IMG/VR virus record: IMGVR_UViG_3300017917_002434
Location: 124,001-188,000 of that record
Length of the DNA: 64,000 nucleotides
Direction: 5' to 3' (one strand)
The position numbers were made by a program, and so were the translations under genes. Below the pieces are notes generated by a model. It made no database searches. It was not told the DNA's origin and saw only the letters and a list, made by a program, of their open reading frames with translations. Shown piece by piece: positions 29,647 to 57,006 of the stretch (positions within the stretch are counted from its first letter, which is position 1; every line of letters starts with the position of its first letter).

Positions 29647-30657
29647 ATGAATCTATTCAAAAAAGCAGCGTGTTTTACCGATATACATTTTGGTCTAAAG
29701 TCGGGCAGTAGAACCCATAATACCGATTGCGAGGATTTCGTTAAATGGTTTTGTGAGACTGCTCGAAACGAAGGTTGCGAAACTGCTATATTTCTAGGCG
29801 ACTGGCACCACAATCGTGCTACCACTGATGTTAGCACTATGAATTATACTGTTTCAAATTTAGAACGACTCAGCAAGAATTTTGAACGTGTATTTTTTAT
29901 ACTAGGTAATCATGATCTATTCTATAAAGATAAGAGAGAAATTAATTCTATAGAATTTATGAGATTGTTTCCTAACGTGGTGCCCATCCGTGATCCGTTT
30001 ACAGATGGCGATGTTACTATTCTGCCTTGGTTAGTCGGGGACGAATGGAAAGATGTTCCTAAAATTAAAAGTCGTTATGTGTTCGGTCATCTTGAATTAC
30101 CGAACTTTTACATGAATGCTATGGTACAGATGCCCGATCACGGCCAGTTACAAAGCACTCATTTTGTAAATCAAGAATATGTATTCAGCGGTCACTTTCA
30201 TAAACGACAGAATCATAGAAATATTACCTACATCGGTAATGCGTTTCCCCACAACTACGCCGATGCCGGAGACGATGATCGCGGAATGATGATCTTAGAG
30301 TGGGGCAAAGCTCCTGAATATAAAACTTGGCCGGGACAGCCTTTGTACAGAGTTTATAAACTTAGTCAGATTATCGACAATCCAGATACCCTGCTAAAAG
30401 AAAAAATGCACTGTAGGGTCACTATCGATCTGCCTATTACTTTTGAAGAAGCAAACTTTATCAAAGAACAGTTTATTCCTCAGTATAATCTCAGAGAGCT
30501 TATGCTGATCCCTGAAAAAGTAGAAGTAGAAAGCAATTCGGTTCCCATAGATATCAATTTTGAAAGTGTTGATACTATTGTTATGAACCAGATTGATGCT
30601 ATTGAAAGCGATTCCTACGACAAACGATTATTGCTGGACATCTATAGAGACTTATGA
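29647..30657 (+). CDS. gp47: Recombination endonuclease subunit (Mre11/SbcD-like)
   Basis: Metallophosphoesterase motifs TDIHFG, LGDWHH, GNHD, GHLE and GHFH. ATGA overlap with the ATPase gene. Confidence 0.92.
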   Translation: MNLFKKAACFTDIHFGLKSGSRTHNTDCEDFVKWFCETARNEGCETAIFLGDWHHNRATTDVSTMNYTVSNLERLSKNFERVFFILGNHDLFYKDKREINSIEFMRLFPNVVPIRDPFTDGDVTILPWLVGDEWKDVPKIKSRYVFGHLELPNFYMNAMVQMPDHGQLQSTHFVNQEYVFSGHFHKRQNHRNITYIGNAFPHNYADAGDDDRGMMILEWGKAPEYKTWPGQPLYRVYKLSQIIDNPDTLLKEKMHCRVTIDLPITFEEANFIKEQFIPQYNLRELMLIPEKVEVESNSVPIDINFESVDTIVMNQIDAIESDSYDKRLLLDIYRDL

Positions 30658-32432
30658 TCAAAATAAAAAATCTCACTGTAAAGAATTTTATGAGCGTGGG
30701 CAATCAAACCCAGGCGATAGACTTTGACCGTGGACAGTTAACCTTAGTACTTGGTGAAAATCTAGATCTAGGAGGTGATGACTCTGGTGCTCGCAATGGT
30801 ACAGGCAAAACTACAATCATTAACGGATTGAGCTACGCTATCTATGGTCAGGCACTGACTAACATTAAGCGTGATAATCTTATAAACAAGATTAATGGCA
30901 AAGGCATGTTAGTTACTGTTACTTTTGATAAAGACGGCACCGAGTACCACATTGAGCGTGGTCGTAAGCCTAATTTGCTGAAGTTTAGTGTCAACGGTCA
31001 GGAACAAGAACTTGACGATCTGGATGAAAGCCAGGGCGATTCAAGAGAAACACAAAAAGCCATCGAAGATATGTTTGGCCTAAGTCACGACATGTTTAAA
31101 CATATCGTAGCATTAAACACTTACACTGAGCCGTTTTTATCGATGAAGTCGGGTGATCAGAGATCTATCATCGAGCAGTTGCTTGGTATTACATTACTAT
31201 CTGAAAAAGCAGAAAATCTCAAAGAACAGATTAAGATAACCAAAGATTCGATTGCTACCGAAAACACTAGGATAGAAACGATCAAAGTTTCTAACGAAAA
31301 AATACAGCAAAGCATCGAAAGTCTAGAACGTAAATTAAAATTATGGGAAGATCAAAAAGAAAAAGCCTTAGAGAATTTAAGGAAAAGCATTGATGTTCTC
31401 AGTACCATCGATATCGATCAAGAAATAATCAACCAACGTGCCCTTGTCGAGTGGAATAAAAATAAGAAAGAACATGATAATCTAACTGCGATGATCGCTA
31501 AACAAATTACTGCGTTAGAAAAAGAACAAAAGACTCTAGACAAGCTAGAAAAAGAACTAATTTTATTAGCCGACCACAAATGCCATAGCTGCGGTCAGGA
31601 TCTACACGACGAGAAACATGAATCTATGGTCTCTGCTAAGTCTAAGCAGGTCGAAGACAGTGCGTCTGCTGTAGCTGAGCACCAGAAAGAGCTGGCTACT
31701 TTGAAAGAGGCATTAGCGTTACTGGGAGAATTAAATGCCTGTCCCCAGGTTACCTACGATAGTTTAGAAGAAGCACTGAATCATAAAAACACTCTTTCAG
31801 GTTTAGAAAAAGATATTACTATCAAAGAAGCAGAGACTAATCCTTATGCTGAACAAATTGAAGAACTAAAAAATACTGCCGTACAGGAAATCGACTGGGA
31901 GGCAGTCAATGAATTAACAAAACTTAAGGATCATCAAGAATTCCTTTACAAATTGTTAACAAATAAAGACAGTTTTGTACGCAAACGTATTATAGATCAG
32001 AACCTAGCGTTCTTAAATCAGCGGCTGACTTACTATCTCGACAAGATCGGTTTACCGCACATCGTAGAATTTCAAAATGATCTCACTGTGATCATTACAC
32101 AGCTCGGACAAGACCTAGATTTTGACAACTTATCAAGAGGTGAACGTAATAGACTTATACTTTCACTGTCATGGGCATTTCGAGATGTATGGGAAAATCT
32201 ATATCAACCTATTAATCTGCTGTTTATCGACGAGTTAGTAGATTCGGGCATGGATGCTAGTGGTGTTGAAAGTTCAATTGCTGTGTTAAAACGTATGACC
32301 AGAGAACGCAACAAAAATGTATTCTTGATTTCTCATAGAGATGATCTAACAAGTCGTGTAAATCATGTGTTAAAAGTTATCAAAGAGAATGGATTTACCA
32401 GCTACAGCAACGATGTGGAGATCGTAGCTTGA
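30654..32432 (+). CDS. gp46: Recombination ATPase subunit (Rad50/SbcC-like)
   Basis: Walker A GARNGTGKTT, coiled coil with CHSC zinc hook, signature LSRGE, Walker B LLFIDE, H-loop ISHR. Confidence 0.93.
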   Translation: MIKIKNLTVKNFMSVGNQTQAIDFDRGQLTLVLGENLDLGGDDSGARNGTGKTTIINGLSYAIYGQALTNIKRDNLINKINGKGMLVTVTFDKDGTEYHIERGRKPNLLKFSVNGQEQELDDLDESQGDSRETQKAIEDMFGLSHDMFKHIVALNTYTEPFLSMKSGDQRSIIEQLLGITLLSEKAENLKEQIKITKDSIATENTRIETIKVSNEKIQQSIESLERKLKLWEDQKEKALENLRKSIDVLSTIDIDQEIINQRALVEWNKNKKEHDNLTAMIAKQITALEKEQKTLDKLEKELILLADHKCHSCGQDLHDEKHESMVSAKSKQVEDSASAVAEHQKELATLKEALALLGELNACPQVTYDSLEEALNHKNTLSGLEKDITIKEAETNPYAEQIEELKNTAVQEIDWEAVNELTKLKDHQEFLYKLLTNKDSFVRKRIIDQNLAFLNQRLTYYLDKIGLPHIVEFQNDLTVIITQLGQDLDFDNLSRGERNRLILSLSWAFRDVWENLYQPINLLFIDELVDSGMDASGVESSIAVLKRMTRERNKNVFLISHRDDLTSRVNHVLKVIKENGFTSYSNDVEIVA

Positions 32433-32659: not shown

Positions 32660-33094
32660 GTGCTGTGGACATATCAAAATCAAATCATAGAAGAAATACC
32701 AGAAGGCTATATTGGCTTTGTTTATCTCATCACCAATCTTAAAACCGGACAGAAGTACATAGGCAAGAAACTAGCACAATTCAAACGTACTAAACCACCA
32801 CTCAAAGGCAAGAAACTTAAAAGAAGATCTGTAGTAGAAAGCGATTGGCGTGACTACTGGGGATCATCTGATAGGCTCAACGCAGACGTCCAAGCATTAG
32901 GTCCGGAAAACTTCACCAGAGAAATACTTTATCTTTGTAAATCCAAGGCAGAAATGTCATATCTAGAGGCTAGAGAGCAGTTTGAACGCAGAGTTTTAGA
33001 AACAGATGACTATTATAATGGTATTATAAACGTCAGAGTAGGCGGATCAAACATACTTAGACAGCGTCTAGAAGAACATAAAAAGGCAAAATAA
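32660..33094 (+). CDS. Minimal GIY-YIG nuclease-like protein
   Basis: GFVYLITNLKTGQKYIGKK fits GIY-x(10-11)-YIG, with conserved downstream YWGSS, REIL and YLEAREQF. GTG start immediately after the upstream TGA. Confidence 0.75.
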   Translation: MLWTYQNQIIEEIPEGYIGFVYLITNLKTGQKYIGKKLAQFKRTKPPLKGKKLKRRSVVESDWRDYWGSSDRLNADVQALGPENFTREILYLCKSKAEMSYLEAREQFERRVLETDDYYNGIINVRVGGSNILRQRLEEHKKAK

Positions 33095-33538
33095 TCGCCA
33101 AAAAAGCCCGCACCGGCGACTGTTATGGTGCCCAAAATCCGCGGTGATGTCACGCGGTAAGGATCCTAAATTGGCGAAGGATAATTACAGTACTATCCTT
33201 AACAGGACGATGATCGGATATGCCTTTAACCGGTTTACTGTACGAAAAATACATTTTTATAGGCTAAATGAGGGTTAATAACCCACGGTTAAAATAAGCG
33301 ATAGCAGGTTTATTTTAATCCGCCGTCAGGATAAGACGGAGCTCGAGGTACCGGCTGACCGCCTCTGTAATGCTCTACTGCTGTGTGACATGTTCGACTC
33401 GGATAATGTTCAAACTTTTGCCCGACCTGGGCAAAGTGTGACTGAACGATCTGGATAATAGTTAAAACTGCTTCGCAGTTAACTTTAAAAAAATGTGTCT
33501 GAGCGGTAGCGATAGACACGAGTGAGCTTTGCTCACTC
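33095..33538 (+). ncRNA. Candidate large structured non-coding element (RNA or ssDNA), family not recognised
   Basis: 444 nt with no convincing ORF and at least 10 stems, including long-range closing helices, G-U-containing stems and a possible pseudoknot. Starts at the base after the GIY-YIG stop. Confidence 0.6.
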
Positions 33539-33545
33539 CTAAATA

Positions 33546-33553
33546 TATAAATA
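33546..33553 (+). promoter_or_regulatory. T4 consensus late promoter TATAAATA
   Basis: Exact consensus 30 nt upstream of the ATG at 33583. A second TAAATA lies at 33540-33545. Confidence 0.75.
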
Positions 33554-33582
33554 ACTAGTATAAGTTCTTAGGAAACTTCTAA

Positions 33583-34725
33583 ATGAAAATCACTGATATA
33601 TTATCTCAAAAACAGCAGGTCGATGAAGCACCTGTTGGTATGTTGAAAAGAGCAGGTCTAGGTATTGCTTCTAAATTGGGCAGTACAAAAGCTAGTGGTG
33701 CTCTTGATATGGCCAAATATGCTAATGGTCTTAGAAAACAATTTGACTTTTATCTAGGACAAACAGATCAAAAGCCTAATTCTGATGCGTTAATAGCATT
33801 CTTAAAGACCAATGGGTTTCCTACAGCTGGTGCTGAAGCTGCGATCAAACAAGCAGGAGTTGAGGCGGGCATGGCAGGCACAGGCGAAATTGCTAAGTCG
33901 CTTGGAGCGGACAGAGTCGAACCAAATATGGATGAGCCTGGCAGCGACACCAATGCCGCTACCGGCAATCCAGAAACTCCTGCTGCTCCTGAAGCTGGTG
34001 CCGATCAGGCTGCTGATGAAAAACCAGCTGCTGGCGGTGCTTCACAGACACAACCTAATTTCAAACAAGGTAATTATCAAGAACCTACATACAGTATGTC
34101 AACAGGGTTTGACAAAGATACGATGAAGAATACTGATGAGCCATTAGCTCCTGGTGCTGTACAACAGAAACAGAAAAAGAAAAAAGAGAGTATTGGTGAG
34201 TTATCTCGTATTGCTGAATTAGCGGGTGTAAAATACACCCCTGTTCAAGAAGTAATGATCGACGAAGTAGAACTTAAGAACGCAACTGTAGATAAAATCA
34301 TCAAAGCCGCAGTTACAGATATTCTCAAATCAAACATGGGACAAAAACTTGATGCTGTCATCGGCGGTCAAGGTGCTTCAGCACAGTCAATCAGCCAAGC
34401 AGGTGGAGATGCTGGAGATGATCAAGGCGGTGGCGGAATTGGTTCTGCTTTTATGGGCGGCATTAAACGCGGTCTAGCAGGCGGTGATGCTGGTGCCGAA
34501 GGTGGAAAAGTCAAAGGTAATCTTAATTACGGTAAGTTATCTGAATTATTACCTGGTGTGGACCCTAACCAATTAAGAAAATCAATTACTAACTATATGA
34601 GTGGTAATTCTCTGACTAGAGAGCAGATGAGTGTGATGGCTACTGCCTTTGGTGAAATAGTTAAGATGGATCCAGCACAGACTACCAAAGCACTTCAGTT
34701 GTTGAAAGCTGTTCGTGCTGGTTAG
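33583..34725 (+). CDS. Late hypothetical protein, candidate internal head protein (380 aa, A/G/P-rich linkers)
   Basis: Has a late promoter, an N-terminus MKITDILSQKQQVDEAP, and an internal ELSRIAELAGV resembling the scaffold C-terminus IRKLAGL. Confidence 0.55.
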   Translation: MKITDILSQKQQVDEAPVGMLKRAGLGIASKLGSTKASGALDMAKYANGLRKQFDFYLGQTDQKPNSDALIAFLKTNGFPTAGAEAAIKQAGVEAGMAGTGEIAKSLGADRVEPNMDEPGSDTNAATGNPETPAAPEAGADQAADEKPAAGGASQTQPNFKQGNYQEPTYSMSTGFDKDTMKNTDEPLAPGAVQQKQKKKKESIGELSRIAELAGVKYTPVQEVMIDEVELKNATVDKIIKAAVTDILKSNMGQKLDAVIGGQGASAQSISQAGGDAGDDQGGGGIGSAFMGGIKRGLAGGDAGAEGGKVKGNLNYGKLSELLPGVDPNQLRKSITNYMSGNSLTREQMSVMATAFGEIVKMDPAQTTKALQLLKAVRAG

Positions 34726-34958
34726 AAGAACGGTAATCCAGAACTTTTAGTAATATCCATATTGTCCTTAACGATCTCAAGGACAAGTTCTCTTTCATCC
34801 CAACTAAGATTCATAGCTTCAGCGAACGATAATCCGCCCCGCATATACCAAACTGAACGCATAGCTTCTAGTTTGATCTGCCTTGCCTGATTATCAAGGG
34901 CTTTCGACTCGGCTAATACCTCGGGGATACTTAACGTCGAAAGCCGTTGCCGAAAAAA
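34722..34958 (-). CDS. -1 frame extension of the gp26-like tail chaperone (gp51-like / lambda gpT-like segment)
   Basis: Open -1 frame RQRLSTLSIPEVLAESKALDNQARQIKLEAMRSVWYMRGGLSFAEAMNLSWDERELV...GLPFF, entered at slippery T TTT TTC. The conserved LSxxEAxxLxxxER pattern of tail-chaperone extensions is present. Confidence 0.7.
   Translation of the reverse strand, partial: FFRQRLSTLSIPEVLAESKALDNQARQIKLEAMRSVWYMRGGLSFAEAMNLSWDERELVLEIVKDNMDITKSSGLPFF
34899..34958 (-). promoter_or_regulatory. Programmed -1 ribosomal frameshift signal
   Basis: Minus strand: T TTT TTC (34958-34952), a 6-nt spacer, then a perfect 10-bp stem GGCTTTCGAC (34945-34936) / GTCGAAAGCC (34908-34899). Confidence 0.75.
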
Positions 34959-46334: not shown

Positions 46335-47519
46335 ATGTCAGAACTACTCGAGTCACGCTGGCAGGAAACCAAAGAGGCACTTCTAGAAGGCCTACAAGGA
46401 ACTCGTCGTTCAGTAATGGCCACTACTCTTGAAAATACCCGCAAGTATTTGTCGGAGAGTGCCACTGCTGGTGCTACTTCTGCCGGTAACGTTGCAACCC
46501 TAAATCGTGTGATCCTACCTGTGATCAGACGTGTTATGCCAACAGTCATTGCTAATGAACTAGTTGGTGTACAACCAATGACAGGCCCAGTTGGTCAAAT
46601 CCATACTCTACGTGTTCGTTACAGCGACGCAGTAGGTACAGATGTTACAGCTGGTGATGAGGCTCTAAGCCCATTCAAGATTGCTACTGCTTATTCTAGC
46701 AATCCTTCTGGTACATCACTAGACGGAGTAGCTGCTTCAACAGCAGCGATGGAAGGCGTAGCTGGTCGTAAGATGAGCATCCAAATCCTCAAGCAAACAG
46801 TTGAAGCTAAGACACGTAAATTGTCTGCTCGCTGGACATTTGAGGCTGCTCAAGATGCACAAGCCCAACAAGGCATTGACATCGAAGCAGAAATCATGGC
46901 TGCTTTAGCACAAGAAATCACAGCTGAAATCGACCAAGAGGTTCTAAGCTCACTACGTACCCTAGCTGGTACAGCAGTTGAGACTTATAATCAAGCTGCT
47001 GTATCAGGTACAGCTACATTCGTTGGTGACGAGCATGCCGCATTGGCAGTTCAAATCAACCGTGTTGCTAACTTGATCGCTCAGCGTACACGTCGTGGTG
47101 CTGGTAACTACGCAGTTGTTAGCCCATTCGCACTTACAATTCTTCAATCTGCTACAACTTCTGCGTTCGCAAGAACAACAGAAGGTACTTTTGAAGCTCC
47201 AACAAACACCAAGTTCGTTGGTACATTGAACAGTGCTATGAAAGTGTATGTTGATGCCTACGCAACTGACAGCACAGACGTGCTTATCGGTTACAAAGGT
47301 TCTAGCGAATCTGACGCACCAGCATTCTACTGCCCATACATTCCATTGATGAGCAGCGGTGTTGTGTTAGATCCAGCAACTTTCGAACCAGTCGTAAGCT
47401 TCATGACACGTTATGGTTATGTTGAGTTGACAAATACAGCTTCTTCTCTAGGTAACGCAGCTGACTACCTAGGTAAAGTTGATATTTCTACCAACTACGC
47501 TAACGTTAAGTTTAGCTAA
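46335..47519 (+). CDS. gp23: Major capsid protein
   Basis: VILPVIRRVMPTVIANELVGVQPMTGPVGQIHTLRVRY, VEAKTRKLSARWTFEAAQD, FYCPYIPL and FMTRYG are gp23 motifs. Confidence 0.96.
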   Translation: MSELLESRWQETKEALLEGLQGTRRSVMATTLENTRKYLSESATAGATSAGNVATLNRVILPVIRRVMPTVIANELVGVQPMTGPVGQIHTLRVRYSDAVGTDVTAGDEALSPFKIATAYSSNPSGTSLDGVAASTAAMEGVAGRKMSIQILKQTVEAKTRKLSARWTFEAAQDAQAQQGIDIEAEIMAALAQEITAEIDQEVLSSLRTLAGTAVETYNQAAVSGTATFVGDEHAALAVQINRVANLIAQRTRRGAGNYAVVSPFALTILQSATTSAFARTTEGTFEAPTNTKFVGTLNSAMKVYVDAYATDSTDVLIGYKGSSESDAPAFYCPYIPLMSSGVVLDPATFEPVVSFMTRYGYVELTNTASSLGNAADYLGKVDISTNYANVKFS

Positions 47520-47866: not shown

Positions 47867-47920
47867 TCTAGAGCGTACTCACAGAGTAACTTATGCGGTA
47901 ACCCACCGCGTAGACCTAGA
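47867..47920 (+). promoter_or_regulatory. Structured 5' leader (three-way junction candidate)
   Basis: P1 TCTAG/CTAGA encloses TACTC-aca-GAGTA and TATGCGGT-aaccc-ACCGCGTA. Confidence 0.5.
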
Positions 47921-47943
47921 ACGTCAAATTAAGGAGAAAACAA

Positions 47944-48351
47944 ATGGGACGTCCATTAAGAAAAGATGTACTTGGTACTGACGCTATCGGTACTCCAGCG
48001 ACAAGCAGCACAGGTGTTAGAGTTGAAGCCTACGCAGGAGGAACAGCATACACTGATGCTACTTACAATGCTTCAACAAATTACGCATACATTTACAAAC
48101 AACGCGGTGCTAAAACTTTTGTTCTAAAAAATCAAGCTGGAACAATTCTAGGACCATGCGTACTTCAATCTGCCATTCCAGACGGAAACGGAGAAATGAG
48201 ATTGAACGGTTATGTTGGCGGAAACGCTTCTGCTCCAACACCCATTGCTAAAATCACAAAGCGTGTAGCTACTGATTTTAATAACAATCGTTATACTTGG
48301 GTTCTAGTCAACGACTCTACCAGCGATTACATTCAACTAACCGCTATCTAA
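47944..48351 (+). CDS. Virion structural protein (135 aa; possible capsid decoration)
   Basis: Late promoter, strong AAGGAG RBS, MGRPL start and beta-rich composition, just downstream of the capsid gene. Confidence 0.55.
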   Translation: MGRPLRKDVLGTDAIGTPATSSTGVRVEAYAGGTAYTDATYNASTNYAYIYKQRGAKTFVLKNQAGTILGPCVLQSAIPDGNGEMRLNGYVGGNASAPTPIAKITKRVATDFNNNRYTWVLVNDSTSDYIQLTAI

Positions 48352-56871: not shown

Positions 56872-56884
56872 ACTACCCAAACGA

Positions 56885-56890
56885 TAAATA
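56885..56890 (+). promoter_or_regulatory. Late promoter TAAATA
   Basis: GATAAATAC opens a 116-nt leader. Confidence 0.6.
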
Positions 56891-57006
56891 CTATTGATTA
56901 CAAGGACGACCAATCCTTGTATGGTTAAACTGTGGTAAACCAGCAAAGAGCCCGCAAGGGATGAGAATTCGGTTAACCGTGAAACACGGGGTGAAAAGGA
57001 GAGCGA
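56891..57006 (+). promoter_or_regulatory. Structured 5' leader, candidate cis-regulatory RNA
   Basis: Hairpins TACAAGGA/TCCTTGTA, TGGTT/AACCA, CCC-GCAA-GGG and CCGTG-AAA-CACGG lie just before the AGGAG RBS. Confidence 0.55.

What the first reader, a model, noticed from the sequence alone, without database searches (positions are those of the whole stretch)
33095..33460. Unrecognised multi-domain structured RNA candidate (about 370-445 nt) with possible pseudoknot
Seen: TCGCCAA (33095-33101)/TTGGCGA (33171-33177) closes a domain containing GCACC/GGTGC and CCGCG-GTG-atgt-CAC-GCGG. AAGGATA/TATCCTT (33177-33200) has a loop ATTACAGTAC complementary over 7 nt to both TACTGTA (33236-33242) and CTGTAAT (33365-33371), suggesting a pseudoknot or switch. 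Further stems: GGGTT/AACCC, TTAAAATAA/TTATTTTAA (33289-33318), CCGTC/GACGG, nested GAGC..GAGG..CGG-ctga-CCG..CCTC..GCTC (33339-33375), and GTTCA..ACTTTTGCCC/GGGCAAAGT..TGAAC (33408-33447). It is the only long non-coding stretch in 64 kb and is more GC-rich than its flanks. I could not match it to tRNA, tmRNA, RNase P or group I/II intron cores.
Basis: partly seen in the sequence, partly recalled or inferred. Interest (0 to 1): 0.8.

Follow-up and report, generated by a model that had tools for sequence, protein, structure and literature searches.

The report
Long-form Polynucleobacter-1 RNA in phage
The gap after a phage nuclease gene encodes a real, intricately folded RNA of about 445 bases; its first third is the catalogued but function-less Polynucleobacter-1 RNA, and its better-conserved remainder is missing from the databases.

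Summary
Window 33084/33095-33538 (+) is a ~445-nt structured RNA. It is not unrecognised, though. Rfam's Polynucleobacter-1 model (RF01718) matches 33105-33242 at 64 bits (cut-off 37).

The remaining ~300 nt have no Rfam model. They are conserved in more than 150 viral and metagenome contigs and covary strongly (middle domain: 24 of 32 pairs compensatory, 0/500 shuffles).

Weinberg et al. (2010) already drew part of the extension, a 'tail' with one pseudoknot, in supplementary files. The 3' domain was not modelled there. It has 17-25-nt invariant stretches, a T-loop-like motif and a terminator-like hairpin.

The RNA always follows, within 0-35 nt, a GIY-YIG-domain-only nuclease gene (128/128 loci) in T4-like phages, and it ends just before a T4-type late promoter. 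The same nuclease family occurs without the RNA in cultured phages, and nuclease alleles and RNA types are reshuffled. An obligate RNA-nuclease complex is therefore unlikely.

Best reading: a stand-alone, trans-acting folded RNA transcribed at the tail of an early/middle operon. Its biochemical role is unknown.

The parts
32660..33094 (+). Gene for a 144-aa nuclease made of a GIY-YIG domain only (SegE-type). It is always directly upstream of the RNA.
   Evidence: Pfam PF19835 at 3.8e-36 and PHROG 447. The predicted fold is closest to the I-TevI catalytic domain. GIY, YIG, R87, E103/E106 and N120 are invariant. The gene is present upstream in 128/128 loci.
33084..33087 (+). Conserved AGGC box 7-11 nt before the first helix. 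Its role is unknown (possible 5' boundary or processing signal).
   Evidence: It is kept whether it lies inside the ORF or in the spacer after the stop codon.
33095..33243 (+). Domain 1: the Rfam Polynucleobacter-1 RNA (33105-33242) plus a 5' strand that Rfam does not model.
   Evidence: RF01718 scores 64.3 bits against a gathering score of 37. The same model scores 60-116 bits in 15 relatives.
33095..33182 (+). Pseudoknot 0. P1 (33095-33101 with 33171-33177) is interleaved with the hairpin 33163-67/33178-82, whose loop holds the P1 3' strand.
   Evidence: Four of five P1 pairs show double changes, e.g. GC15/UA9/AU8/CG4. Covariation of the hairpin is seen and in the Rfam structure.
33256..33393 (+). 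Domain 2: a three-way junction (GGC 33262-64 / GCC 33322-24), the GGG/CCC hairpin, the long variable hairpin and a double-pseudoknot core.
   Evidence: Covariance model R1 finds one hit per RNA-bearing locus and 125.6 bits here. 98.2% of cells are paired, 24/32 pairs are compensatory, and 0/500 shuffles reach this.
33301..33384 (+). Pseudoknot 1: the loop of the long hairpin (33301-07) pairs with 33378-84.
   Evidence: 98.7% paired, 78 cells with both sides changed, 0/500 shuffles, slid controls 20-46%. It corresponds to the 7-bp SS_cons_1 helix in Weinberg's alignment.
33325..33359 (+). Pseudoknot 2: GUCAG 33325-29 pairs with CUGAC 33355-59. It crosses helices 33338-42/33372-76 and 33345-48/33362-65.
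   Evidence: 95.8% paired, 71 cells with both sides changed, 0/500 shuffles, slid controls 14-35%. The divergent relative L087 has GUUGAC/GUCAAC.
33385..33465 (+). Domain 3 core. It holds the T-loop-like GUUCGACUC (33392-33400), two GGAUAAU boxes (33401-07 and 33453-59), a predicted invariant helix UCGGAU 33399-404 / AUCUGG 33449-54, and a GC-rich hairpin at 33416-36.
   Evidence: The 17-mer and 19-mer are exact in 84 and 76 IMG/VR contigs, and the gapped pattern is in 67 metagenome contigs. The hairpin stem variants are UUUGCCC, UUAGCCC and UUCGCCC. The invariant helix is predicted only.
33466..33480 (+). Variable hairpin with a C(UUC)G loop.
   Evidence: GC21/AU15/CG12 at one pair and CG28/UA19 at the next.
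33495..33519 (+). Hairpin with a conserved GAGC-GNNA-GCGA top (tandem G.A pairs and a GNNA loop) and a freely covarying stem.
   Evidence: At least 8 different stems across relatives.
33520..33538 (+). Terminal hairpin, terminator-like; probable 3' end of the RNA.
   Evidence: 7-8 bp in nearly all relatives with at least 9 different stems, often followed by U-rich sequence. Not called by the strict terminator scan.
33546..33553 (+). TATAAATA, a T4-type late promoter for the downstream gene. It marks the end of the RNA unit.
   Evidence: An ATAAATA box follows the terminal hairpin in nearly all relatives. That it is a late promoter rests on established T4 knowledge.
33583..34725 (+). Downstream 380-aa gene of unknown function. 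It is not part of the element, and this slot is variable between phages.
   Evidence: No Pfam or PHROG family. Different gene clusters occupy this position in relatives.

Best explanation
Window 33084/33095-33538 (+) is a full-length copy, about 445 nt, of the Polynucleobacter-1 RNA family. It is carried by a T4-like freshwater phage (IMG/VR contig of 269.7 kb).

Shown:
- It is a conserved RNA fold of three domains with three pseudoknots.
- Its most conserved part is the double-pseudoknot core of domain 2 plus domain 3, not the part that Rfam models.
- It sits 0-35 nt behind a GIY-YIG-only nuclease gene on the same strand.
- It ends in a terminator-like hairpin a few bases before a late promoter.

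Inferred:
- It is made as the last part of the early/middle transcript that runs gp47-gp46-small ORF-nuclease, with no separate promoter seen. It is then used as a folded RNA in its own right, acting in trans.
- The invariant junction nucleotides form either a binding surface for a conserved protein or RNA partner or a catalytic core.
- The adjacency to the nuclease gene reflects one transcription unit rather than an obligate complex.
For: Family identity: RF01718 at 64.3 bits.

Extent: the whole 440-450 nt is alignable in more than 150 loci, and the domain 2 core motif is found in 152/152.

Structure. Strand.

The 5' domain is the least conserved part. L087 keeps domains 2 and 3 but fails the RF01718 threshold.

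One transcription unit: the stop-to-P1 distance is 0-35 nt. No sigma-70-like site lies on the + strand between 32457 and 33800. Genes vary on both sides of the nuclease+RNA pair but never between them.

End: terminal hairpin, then the ATAAATA box.

Independence from the nuclease:
- Melnitz (64% identical protein), C48C1, S-RIM2, ACP17, a Variovorax phage and phiM12 have the gene but no RNA.
- Nuclease identity and RNA identity are decoupled, e.g. L052 at 98% against 66%.
- A divergent long copy lies in the Polynucleobacter chromosome, with no gene end marked upstream.

Relatives' sequences occur in metatranscriptome assemblies.
Against: No direct evidence for transcription, ends or stability. 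The RNA-library contigs are few, of low depth and could be DNA carry-over.

No biochemical role can be named.

The 128/128 linkage to the nuclease gene is stronger than operon membership alone would demand.

Confidence: 0.55

Rival explanations
1. The RNA is the partner of the GIY-YIG nuclease. The enzyme lacks the DNA-binding domain of Seg-type homing endonucleases, and the RNA either targets it, scaffolds it, or holds it inactive (antitoxin-like).
For: Invariant adjacency in 128/128 loci. The protein is 141-163 aa, catalytic domain only, with an intact active site. Weinberg et al. also noted the upstream gene family.
Against: The same protein family, down to 64% identity, works in other phages without any such RNA and in other genome positions. 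Nuclease alleles and RNA 5'-domain types occur in all combinations. There is no unstructured variable segment that could serve as a guide. The invariant 17- and 20-mers have no complementary site in the window or, as exact matches, elsewhere in viral contigs. There are no tandem repeats as in type III antitoxins.
Confidence: 0.15
2. It is a cis-acting element. Either it is a 3' UTR that stabilises or insulates the upstream early/middle mRNA and terminates it before the late genes, or it is a leader that regulates the downstream gene.
For: Its position at the early/late boundary, ending in a terminator-like hairpin. Rfam's authors listed it as possibly cis-regulatory.
Against: About 445 nt with three pseudoknots and 17-25-nt invariant stretches is far more than a terminator or stabiliser needs. 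The downstream gene differs between phages and has its own late promoter after the hairpin. The other phages' nuclease genes need no such UTR.
Confidence: 0.15
3. It is part of a selfish cassette. Either the nuclease is a free-standing homing endonuclease whose target or cargo is the invariant RNA gene (as T4 SegB and the tRNA region), or the RNA is a relic of an intron.
For: Within the closer clade the nuclease is more conserved than gp46 (98% against 73% in L052), and alleles are swapped between otherwise similar phages (L008: gp46 83%, nuclease 62%). Invariant RNA sequence would make a good cleavage site. In S-RIM2 a tRNA gene follows the homologue.
Against: No RNA-bearing locus lacks the nuclease gene, so no empty target is seen. 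The protein lacks a DNA-binding domain and is a widely fixed gene in many T4-like phages. There is no group I or II signal at E up to 10, and no split host gene.
Confidence: 0.08
4. It is a chance set of stems in a spacer, or a short protein-coding gene that was missed.
For: Both strands fold equally well by energy. Small ORFs exist at 33144-33278 (+) and 33310-33519 (-).
Against: Hundreds of compensatory changes, 0/500 shuffles and poor slid controls. An Rfam hit 27 bits above threshold. Substitutions follow helices, not codons.
Confidence: 0.01

Closest known systems
Polynucleobacter-1 RNA (Rfam RF01718; Weinberg et al. 2010, PMC2864571)
   Same: The 5' 138 nt match the model end to end. The hairpins and the multistem junction are the same. 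It lies downstream of the same kind of small ORF, and it comes from freshwater. The 2010 raw alignment also holds a 'tail' with the long hairpin and the 7-bp pseudoknot found here.
   Different: The Rfam model covers 141 nt only. Here the unit is about 445 nt. The P1 5' strand, pseudoknot 2 and the whole 3' domain do not appear in the 2010 motif or consensus lines as read. The authors found no copy in a purified phage; here every copy sits in a T4-like phage gene order. No cultured phage has it yet.
cow-rumen-2 RNA (Rfam RF02947)
   Same: Domain 2 aligns over the full 106-position model in the same register in two relatives. The shared features are a hairpin with a UAGC loop, GCCGYCAU, AGC, an inner helix around ACAGGAUGACC, and GUAA.
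   Different: The scores are 19.6 and 22.3 bits against a threshold of 66, so membership fails. This is a lead to a possible superfamily, not a finding. The function of cow-rumen-2 is also unknown.
Large ornate RNAs of phages and bacteria (GOLLD, ROOL, OLE)
   Same: Several hundred nucleotides, many helices and pseudoknots, invariant junctions with freely varying peripheral hairpins, found in phages with sporadic bacterial copies, and function unknown. GOLLD, ROOL and OLE form RNA-only homo-oligomers (abstract of PMC12286853, listed; the phage/bacterial distribution of GOLLD and ROOL is from my own knowledge).
   Different: No sequence or model similarity. It is smaller. Nothing here tests oligomerisation.
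T4 tRNA-region stable RNAs with the SegB homing endonuclease (established T4 knowledge)
   Same: A Seg-type GIY-YIG gene lies next to genes for stable structured RNAs in a T4-like phage. In cyanophage S-RIM2 a tRNA follows the homologue.
   Different: SegB has a DNA-binding part and is sporadic. The protein here is domain-only and fixed. The RNA is not a tRNA.
Nuclease plus scaffold-RNA pairs (TnpB/IscB with omega RNA, e.g. Rfam HEARO)
   Same: A small nuclease gene abutting a long structured RNA on the same strand.
   Different: A different nuclease fold (GIY-YIG, not RuvC), no transposon ends, no variable guide segment, and the protein family exists without the RNA.

Membership tests
Polynucleobacter-1 RNA (RF01718) | The covariance-model score reaches Rfam's gathering score (37 bits) over the full model. 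| tested here: met
   64.3 bits, model positions 1-141, window 33105-33242 +. Relatives score 60-116 bits.
Polynucleobacter-1 RNA (RF01718) | The consensus helices are formed and kept by compensatory changes. | tested here: met
   P2 has AU/GC and AU/CG/UA swaps. The other helices are formed in the cmscan alignment, and their variants are seen.
Polynucleobacter-1 RNA (RF01718) | The 'tail' with the long hairpin and 7-bp pseudoknot, as in the authors' full motif. | tested here: met
   Long hairpin 33287-33320 and pseudoknot 33301-07/33378-84, compared with SS_cons and SS_cons_1.
Polynucleobacter-1 RNA (RF01718) | It lies downstream of a gene of family GOS11034 (possible relative of P-SSM2 PSSM2_218). 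| tested here: inconclusive
   It always follows the GIY-YIG gene, and that family is common in cyanophages. The identity of GOS11034 or PSSM2_218 with it was not checked directly.
cow-rumen-2 RNA (RF02947) | The score reaches the gathering threshold (66 bits). | tested here: not met
   19.6 bits and 22.3 bits.
Group I / group II introns | A match to the intron core models, and interruption of a host gene. | tested here: not met
   No such hit at E up to 10 in 32900-33750. The flanking ORFs are complete, and the downstream ones are unrelated between phages.
tRNA / tmRNA | A cloverleaf or tRNA-like domain with a tag reading frame. | tested here: not met
   ARAGORN finds none in 64 kb, and there is no Rfam hit. 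Only an isolated T-loop-like GUUCGACUC is present.
Type III toxin-antitoxin RNA antitoxin | Tandem repeats of a short RNA unit next to the toxin gene. | tested here: not met
   No tandem repeat in 32900-33700. Direct repeats are only short two-copy matches.
Guide-RNA nucleases (OMEGA/CRISPR-like) | A scaffold RNA plus a variable, unstructured guide, with an RuvC/HNH effector. | tested here: not met
   The effector is GIY-YIG. All variable segments are paired hairpin stems.
GOLLD / ROOL / OLE | A match to their Rfam models. | tested here: not met
   No hit at gathering level or at E up to 10.
GOLLD / ROOL / OLE | Homo-oligomeric RNA-only assembly. | not testable with these tools
   This needs native gels or cryo-EM.

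The most novel reading that the evidence does not exclude
The long form is a new class of large phage RNA with a biochemical activity of its own. It could be a ribozyme or an RNA-only assembly built around the double-pseudoknot and T-loop core. It could instead be the missing nucleic-acid-recognition module of the DNA-binding-domain-less GIY-YIG nuclease, which would make an RNA-dependent GIY-YIG enzyme. In either case it may share an ancient core with cow-rumen-2 RNAs.
Probability: 0.12. Interest if true: 0.85.

Novelty: new member of a known kind. Interest (0 to 1): 0.45.

Why it matters
Polynucleobacter-1 has been an orphan motif since 2010, and no follow-up was found in the held literature.

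This window and its relatives show four things:
- The database model captures only the least conserved third of a ~445-nt RNA.
- The RNA belongs to abundant T4-like phages found in freshwater-type metagenomes.
- It has three pseudoknots and a near-invariant 3' core.
- It is tied to one transcription unit with a small nuclease gene.

That makes the family a concrete candidate for the short list of large structured RNAs of unknown function. It also gives a defined construct (33084-33538) and more than 150 natural variants for structure probing, cryo-EM and activity tests. A full-length model would improve the annotation of phage metagenomes.

Tried and rejected
1. Known RNA classes for the 3' 300 nt. 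An Rfam scan at E up to 10 gave only a weak cow-rumen-2 alignment. ARAGORN found nothing.

2. Cultured phages. blastn at E up to 1 found no copy of the RNA in 50,697 records. Rfam and my domain 2 model found nothing behind the nuclease homologues of Melnitz, C48C1, S-RIM2, ACP17, a Variovorax phage and phiM12.

3. A first degenerate pattern from domain 1 returned four contigs, none of which reached the Rfam or domain 2 model thresholds.

4. A 22-mer copied from the Polynucleobacter-type sequence in Weinberg's alignment found nothing in viral contigs.

5. The genome-collection scan gave one contig from an uncultured-bacterium bin (2.4 kb; whether it is phage DNA was not tested) and one false hit, L098.

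6. Expression. Metatranscriptome contigs of relatives cover both the nuclease gene and the RNA core, at low depth and without ends, so this is not decisive.

7. RNAalifold on whole-domain MAFFT alignments failed for domains 1 and 3 because hairpin lengths vary. I used per-helix counts and per-sequence folds instead. mafft-qinsi is not installed.

8. Antisense-target idea. There is no complementary site for the invariant segments in the window.

9. Recoding (read-through or frameshift) at the nuclease stop codon was rejected by inspection, because the stop codon sits at different distances from P1 in different phages.

10. The PDB sequence search for the nuclease found nothing. The fold search gave only I-TevI at weak E-value but probability 0.9.

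Full report
WHAT IS THERE

The window is part of IMG/VR contig 3300017917_002434 (269.7 kb). Around the finding the + strand carries these genes:
- gp47-like phosphoesterase (29647-30657).
- gp46-like SbcC/AAA protein (30654-32432).
- A 76-aa ORF.
- A 144-aa protein that is nothing but a SegE-type GIY-YIG domain (32660-33094; Pfam 3.8e-36; PHROG 447).

A 488-nt stretch without credible ORFs follows, then a 380-aa gene of unknown function (33583-34725). After that come baseplate and gp5-like genes. This is a T4-like phage. The gap is the longest non-coding stretch of the window once a 69-aa antisense ORF is discounted. Its GC is 45% against 38% overall, although the downstream gene has 44%.

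IT IS A KNOWN FAMILY, IN PART

Rfam's gathering-level scan of the 64 kb gives two hits. One is Polynucleobacter-1 RNA (RF01718) at 33105-33242 on the + strand, at 64.3 bits against a cut-off of 37, matched over the whole 141-position model. Nothing in Rfam reaches threshold on 33243-33582, even at E up to 10.

THE ELEMENT IS MUCH LONGER THAN THE RFAM MODEL

Two relatives were found through the downstream protein, which is only 55% identical. They share the entire intergenic region, with substitutions that keep helices. Two invariant stretches of the 3' part serve as exact search words:
- GTTCGACTCGGATAATG (33392-33408) occurs in 84 IMG/VR contigs.
- GACTGAACGATCTGGATAA (33440-33458) occurs in 76 IMG/VR contigs.
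- A gapped pattern of both occurs in 67 metagenome contigs.

Every locus with enough flank carries the whole unit, from the 5' helix to two terminal hairpins. The domain 2 core motif is present in 152 of 152. After removing near-duplicates, 60 sequences remain at roughly 55-90% identity to the window.

STRUCTURE

The strand is +. In supported helices, G-U pairs outnumber A-C pairs 169 to 37.

Domain 1 (33095-33243) is the Rfam structure plus a 5' strand that Rfam leaves out. TCGCCAA 33095-101 pairs with TTGGCGA 33171-77 and covaries (GC15/UA9/AU8/CG4 at one pair, GC22/CG14 at another). Its 3' strand lies in the loop of the Rfam hairpin 33163-67/33178-82, so this is a pseudoknot.

Domain 2 (33256-33393) contains:
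- A three-way junction closed by GGC 33262-64 / GCC 33322-24.
- A GGG/CCC hairpin.
- A 13-bp hairpin in which every pair covaries.
- The helices GGAGC 33338-42 / GCUCU 33372-76 and GAGG 33345-48 / CCUC 33362-65.

I built a covariance model from 38 sequences. It finds exactly one hit in each of 59 RNA-bearing sources, including the window, and none in control loci. On its alignment, 98.2% of cells are paired against 77.5% in shuffles. 24 of 32 pairs have changes on both sides. The covariation score is 0.58 against 0.17 in shuffles (0/500 reach it) and 0.05-0.10 when partners are slid.

Two further pseudoknots are supported on the same alignment:
- The loop 33301-07 pairs with 33378-84 (98.7% paired, 78 double-change cells, 0/500).
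- GUCAG 33325-29 pairs with CUGAC 33355-59 (95.8% paired, 71 double-change cells, 0/500).

Domain 3 (33385-33538) contains:
- A T-loop-like GUUCGACUC.
- Two GGAUAAU boxes.
- An invariant, hence untestable, predicted helix UCGGAU/AUCUGG.
- A GC-rich hairpin and a C(UUC)G hairpin.
- A hairpin with a GAGC-GNNA-GCGA top.
- A terminal hairpin.

All of these hairpins have many different stems across relatives.

Supported:
- TCGCCAA/TTGGCGA.
- GCACC/GGTGC.
- The CCGCGGTG hairpin.
- The loop pairing with TACTGTA, which is simply a helix of the Rfam structure.
- GGG/CCC.
- The long A/U-rich hairpin.
- GAGC/GCTC.
- GAGG/CCTC.
- The GCCC/GGGC hairpin.

Not supported:
- AAGGATA/TATCCTT.
- The pairing with CTGTAAT 33365-71. 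It is invariant while its proposed partner varies, with 47% of cells paired.
- CCGTC/GACGG, which is replaced by pseudoknot 2.
- GTTCA/TGAAC beyond three invariant pairs.

CGG/CCG never varies and overlaps pseudoknot 2.

WHAT WAS ALREADY KNOWN

The only paper in the held library that treats the motif is Weinberg et al. 2010. Its supplement makes three points:
- The 3' half is not always detected.
- Most copies lie downstream of genes of family GOS11034, possibly related to PSSM2_218 of cyanophage P-SSM2.
- None was found in a purified phage.

The raw alignment shows that the authors' full motif had a 'tail'. It reaches to about my position 33384 and includes the long hairpin and a 7-bp pseudoknot. 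The search motif that became the Rfam model stops after 141 nt.

Three features do not appear in their motif or consensus lines as I read them: the P1 5' strand, pseudoknot 2 and domain 3. Their flanking sequence does show that a Polynucleobacter chromosomal copy (NC_009379.1:2130672-2131206) also has a long, divergent 3' part.

CONTEXT

In all loci the gene order is gp47, gp46, variable small ORFs, the GIY-YIG gene, the RNA, variable genes, baseplate, gp5-like. The nuclease gene is upstream in 128 of 128 loci with enough sequence. Its stop codon lies 0-35 nt before P1. A conserved AGGC box lies 7-11 nt before P1 whether or not it is inside the ORF. After the terminal hairpin nearly all relatives have an ATAAATA box, the T4 late-promoter motif (33546-33553 here). 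The pair nuclease gene + RNA therefore looks like the end of an early/middle transcription unit. No sigma-70-like site lies on the + strand between 32457 and 33800.

IS THE RNA THE NUCLEASE'S PARTNER?

The protein has an intact GIY-YIG active site. Its predicted fold is closest to the I-TevI catalytic domain. It has no DNA-binding domain, which makes an RNA partner tempting. Three observations argue against an obligate pair:

- The family is very large, with at least 7,987 clusters. It is found in Melnitz (64% identity), cyanophages, and Sinorhizobium, Stenotrophomonas, Acidovorax and Variovorax phages. There it sits in other genome positions (for example after nrdB), with no room or no signal for the RNA.
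- Nuclease and RNA histories are decoupled. L052 has a 98% identical nuclease but a 66% identical RNA of another 5'-domain type. L008 has 83% gp46 but a 62% nuclease.
- The RNA has no unstructured variable segment, and its invariant stretches have no complementary target in the window.

EXPRESSION

Metatranscriptome assemblies contain contigs of relatives over the nuclease gene and over the RNA core. Depth is low, ends are not defined and DNA carry-over cannot be excluded. Transcription therefore remains inferred.

VERDICT

This is a genuine, elaborate RNA and a new (phage) member of a known but functionally orphan family. Its conserved core lies outside the current Rfam model.

The most likely role is a stand-alone, trans-acting folded RNA made at the tail of the nuclease transcript (confidence 0.55). 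The alternatives are:
- A partner or regulator of the nuclease (0.15).
- A cis-acting UTR or terminator element (0.15).
- Part of a homing cassette (0.08).

A weak but full-length resemblance of domain 2 to cow-rumen-2 RNA (19.6 and 22.3 bits) is a lead to a wider family, not a result.

Noticed in passing
window 47875-47946 (+); L087 11953-12039 (+): A second Rfam family, freshwater-2 RNA (RF02980; 60 and 72.5 bits). In the window it lies in the gap between a 96-aa ORF that follows the gp23 major capsid gene (46335-47519) and a 135-aa ORF. It recurs in the divergent relative L087, so it may be a conserved leader in this phage group.
   Followed up: partly
window 32660-33094 and phage records: The GIY-YIG-only protein family (PHROG 447) is labelled 'NAD synthetase' in hundreds of phage genome records. 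Pfam, the invariant residues and the predicted fold say GIY-YIG nuclease, so the label looks like a propagated mis-annotation.
   Followed up: partly
window 33288-33387; L002 3705-3810: Domain 2 aligns end to end, below threshold, with Rfam cow-rumen-2 (RF02947), sharing the UAGC-loop hairpin and the ACAGGAUGACC core. This may be a distant relationship between two orphan RNA families.
   Followed up: partly
L087 520-950: The most divergent relative keeps domain 2's core, domain 3, the GA hairpin and the terminator. Its 5' domain is different and does not reach the RF01718 threshold, so the Rfam-modelled part is the least conserved part of the RNA.
   Followed up: partly
window 33401-33407 and 33453-33459: Two invariant GGAUAAU boxes. 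One environmental relative printed in Weinberg's alignment has GGAUGAU in both. The change is coordinated but rests on a single example.
   Followed up: no
window 34902-34918 (+): A 3-mismatch copy of the invariant 17-mer of domain 3, TTTCGACTCGGCTAATA, about 1.5 kb downstream. It is close to the chance expectation (2 of 100 shuffles give two matches).
   Followed up: no
L167 (Synechococcus phage S-RIM2) 3083-3155 and 4587-4681: In this cyanophage the nuclease homologue is followed 160 nt later by a tRNA-Arg gene, and a wcaG RNA motif (RF01761, 56 bits) lies about 1.7 kb downstream.
   Followed up: no
window 56872-57006: The next-largest ORF-free gap with raised GC (135 nt, 44%). There is no Rfam hit at gathering level, and it was not examined further.
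   Followed up: no
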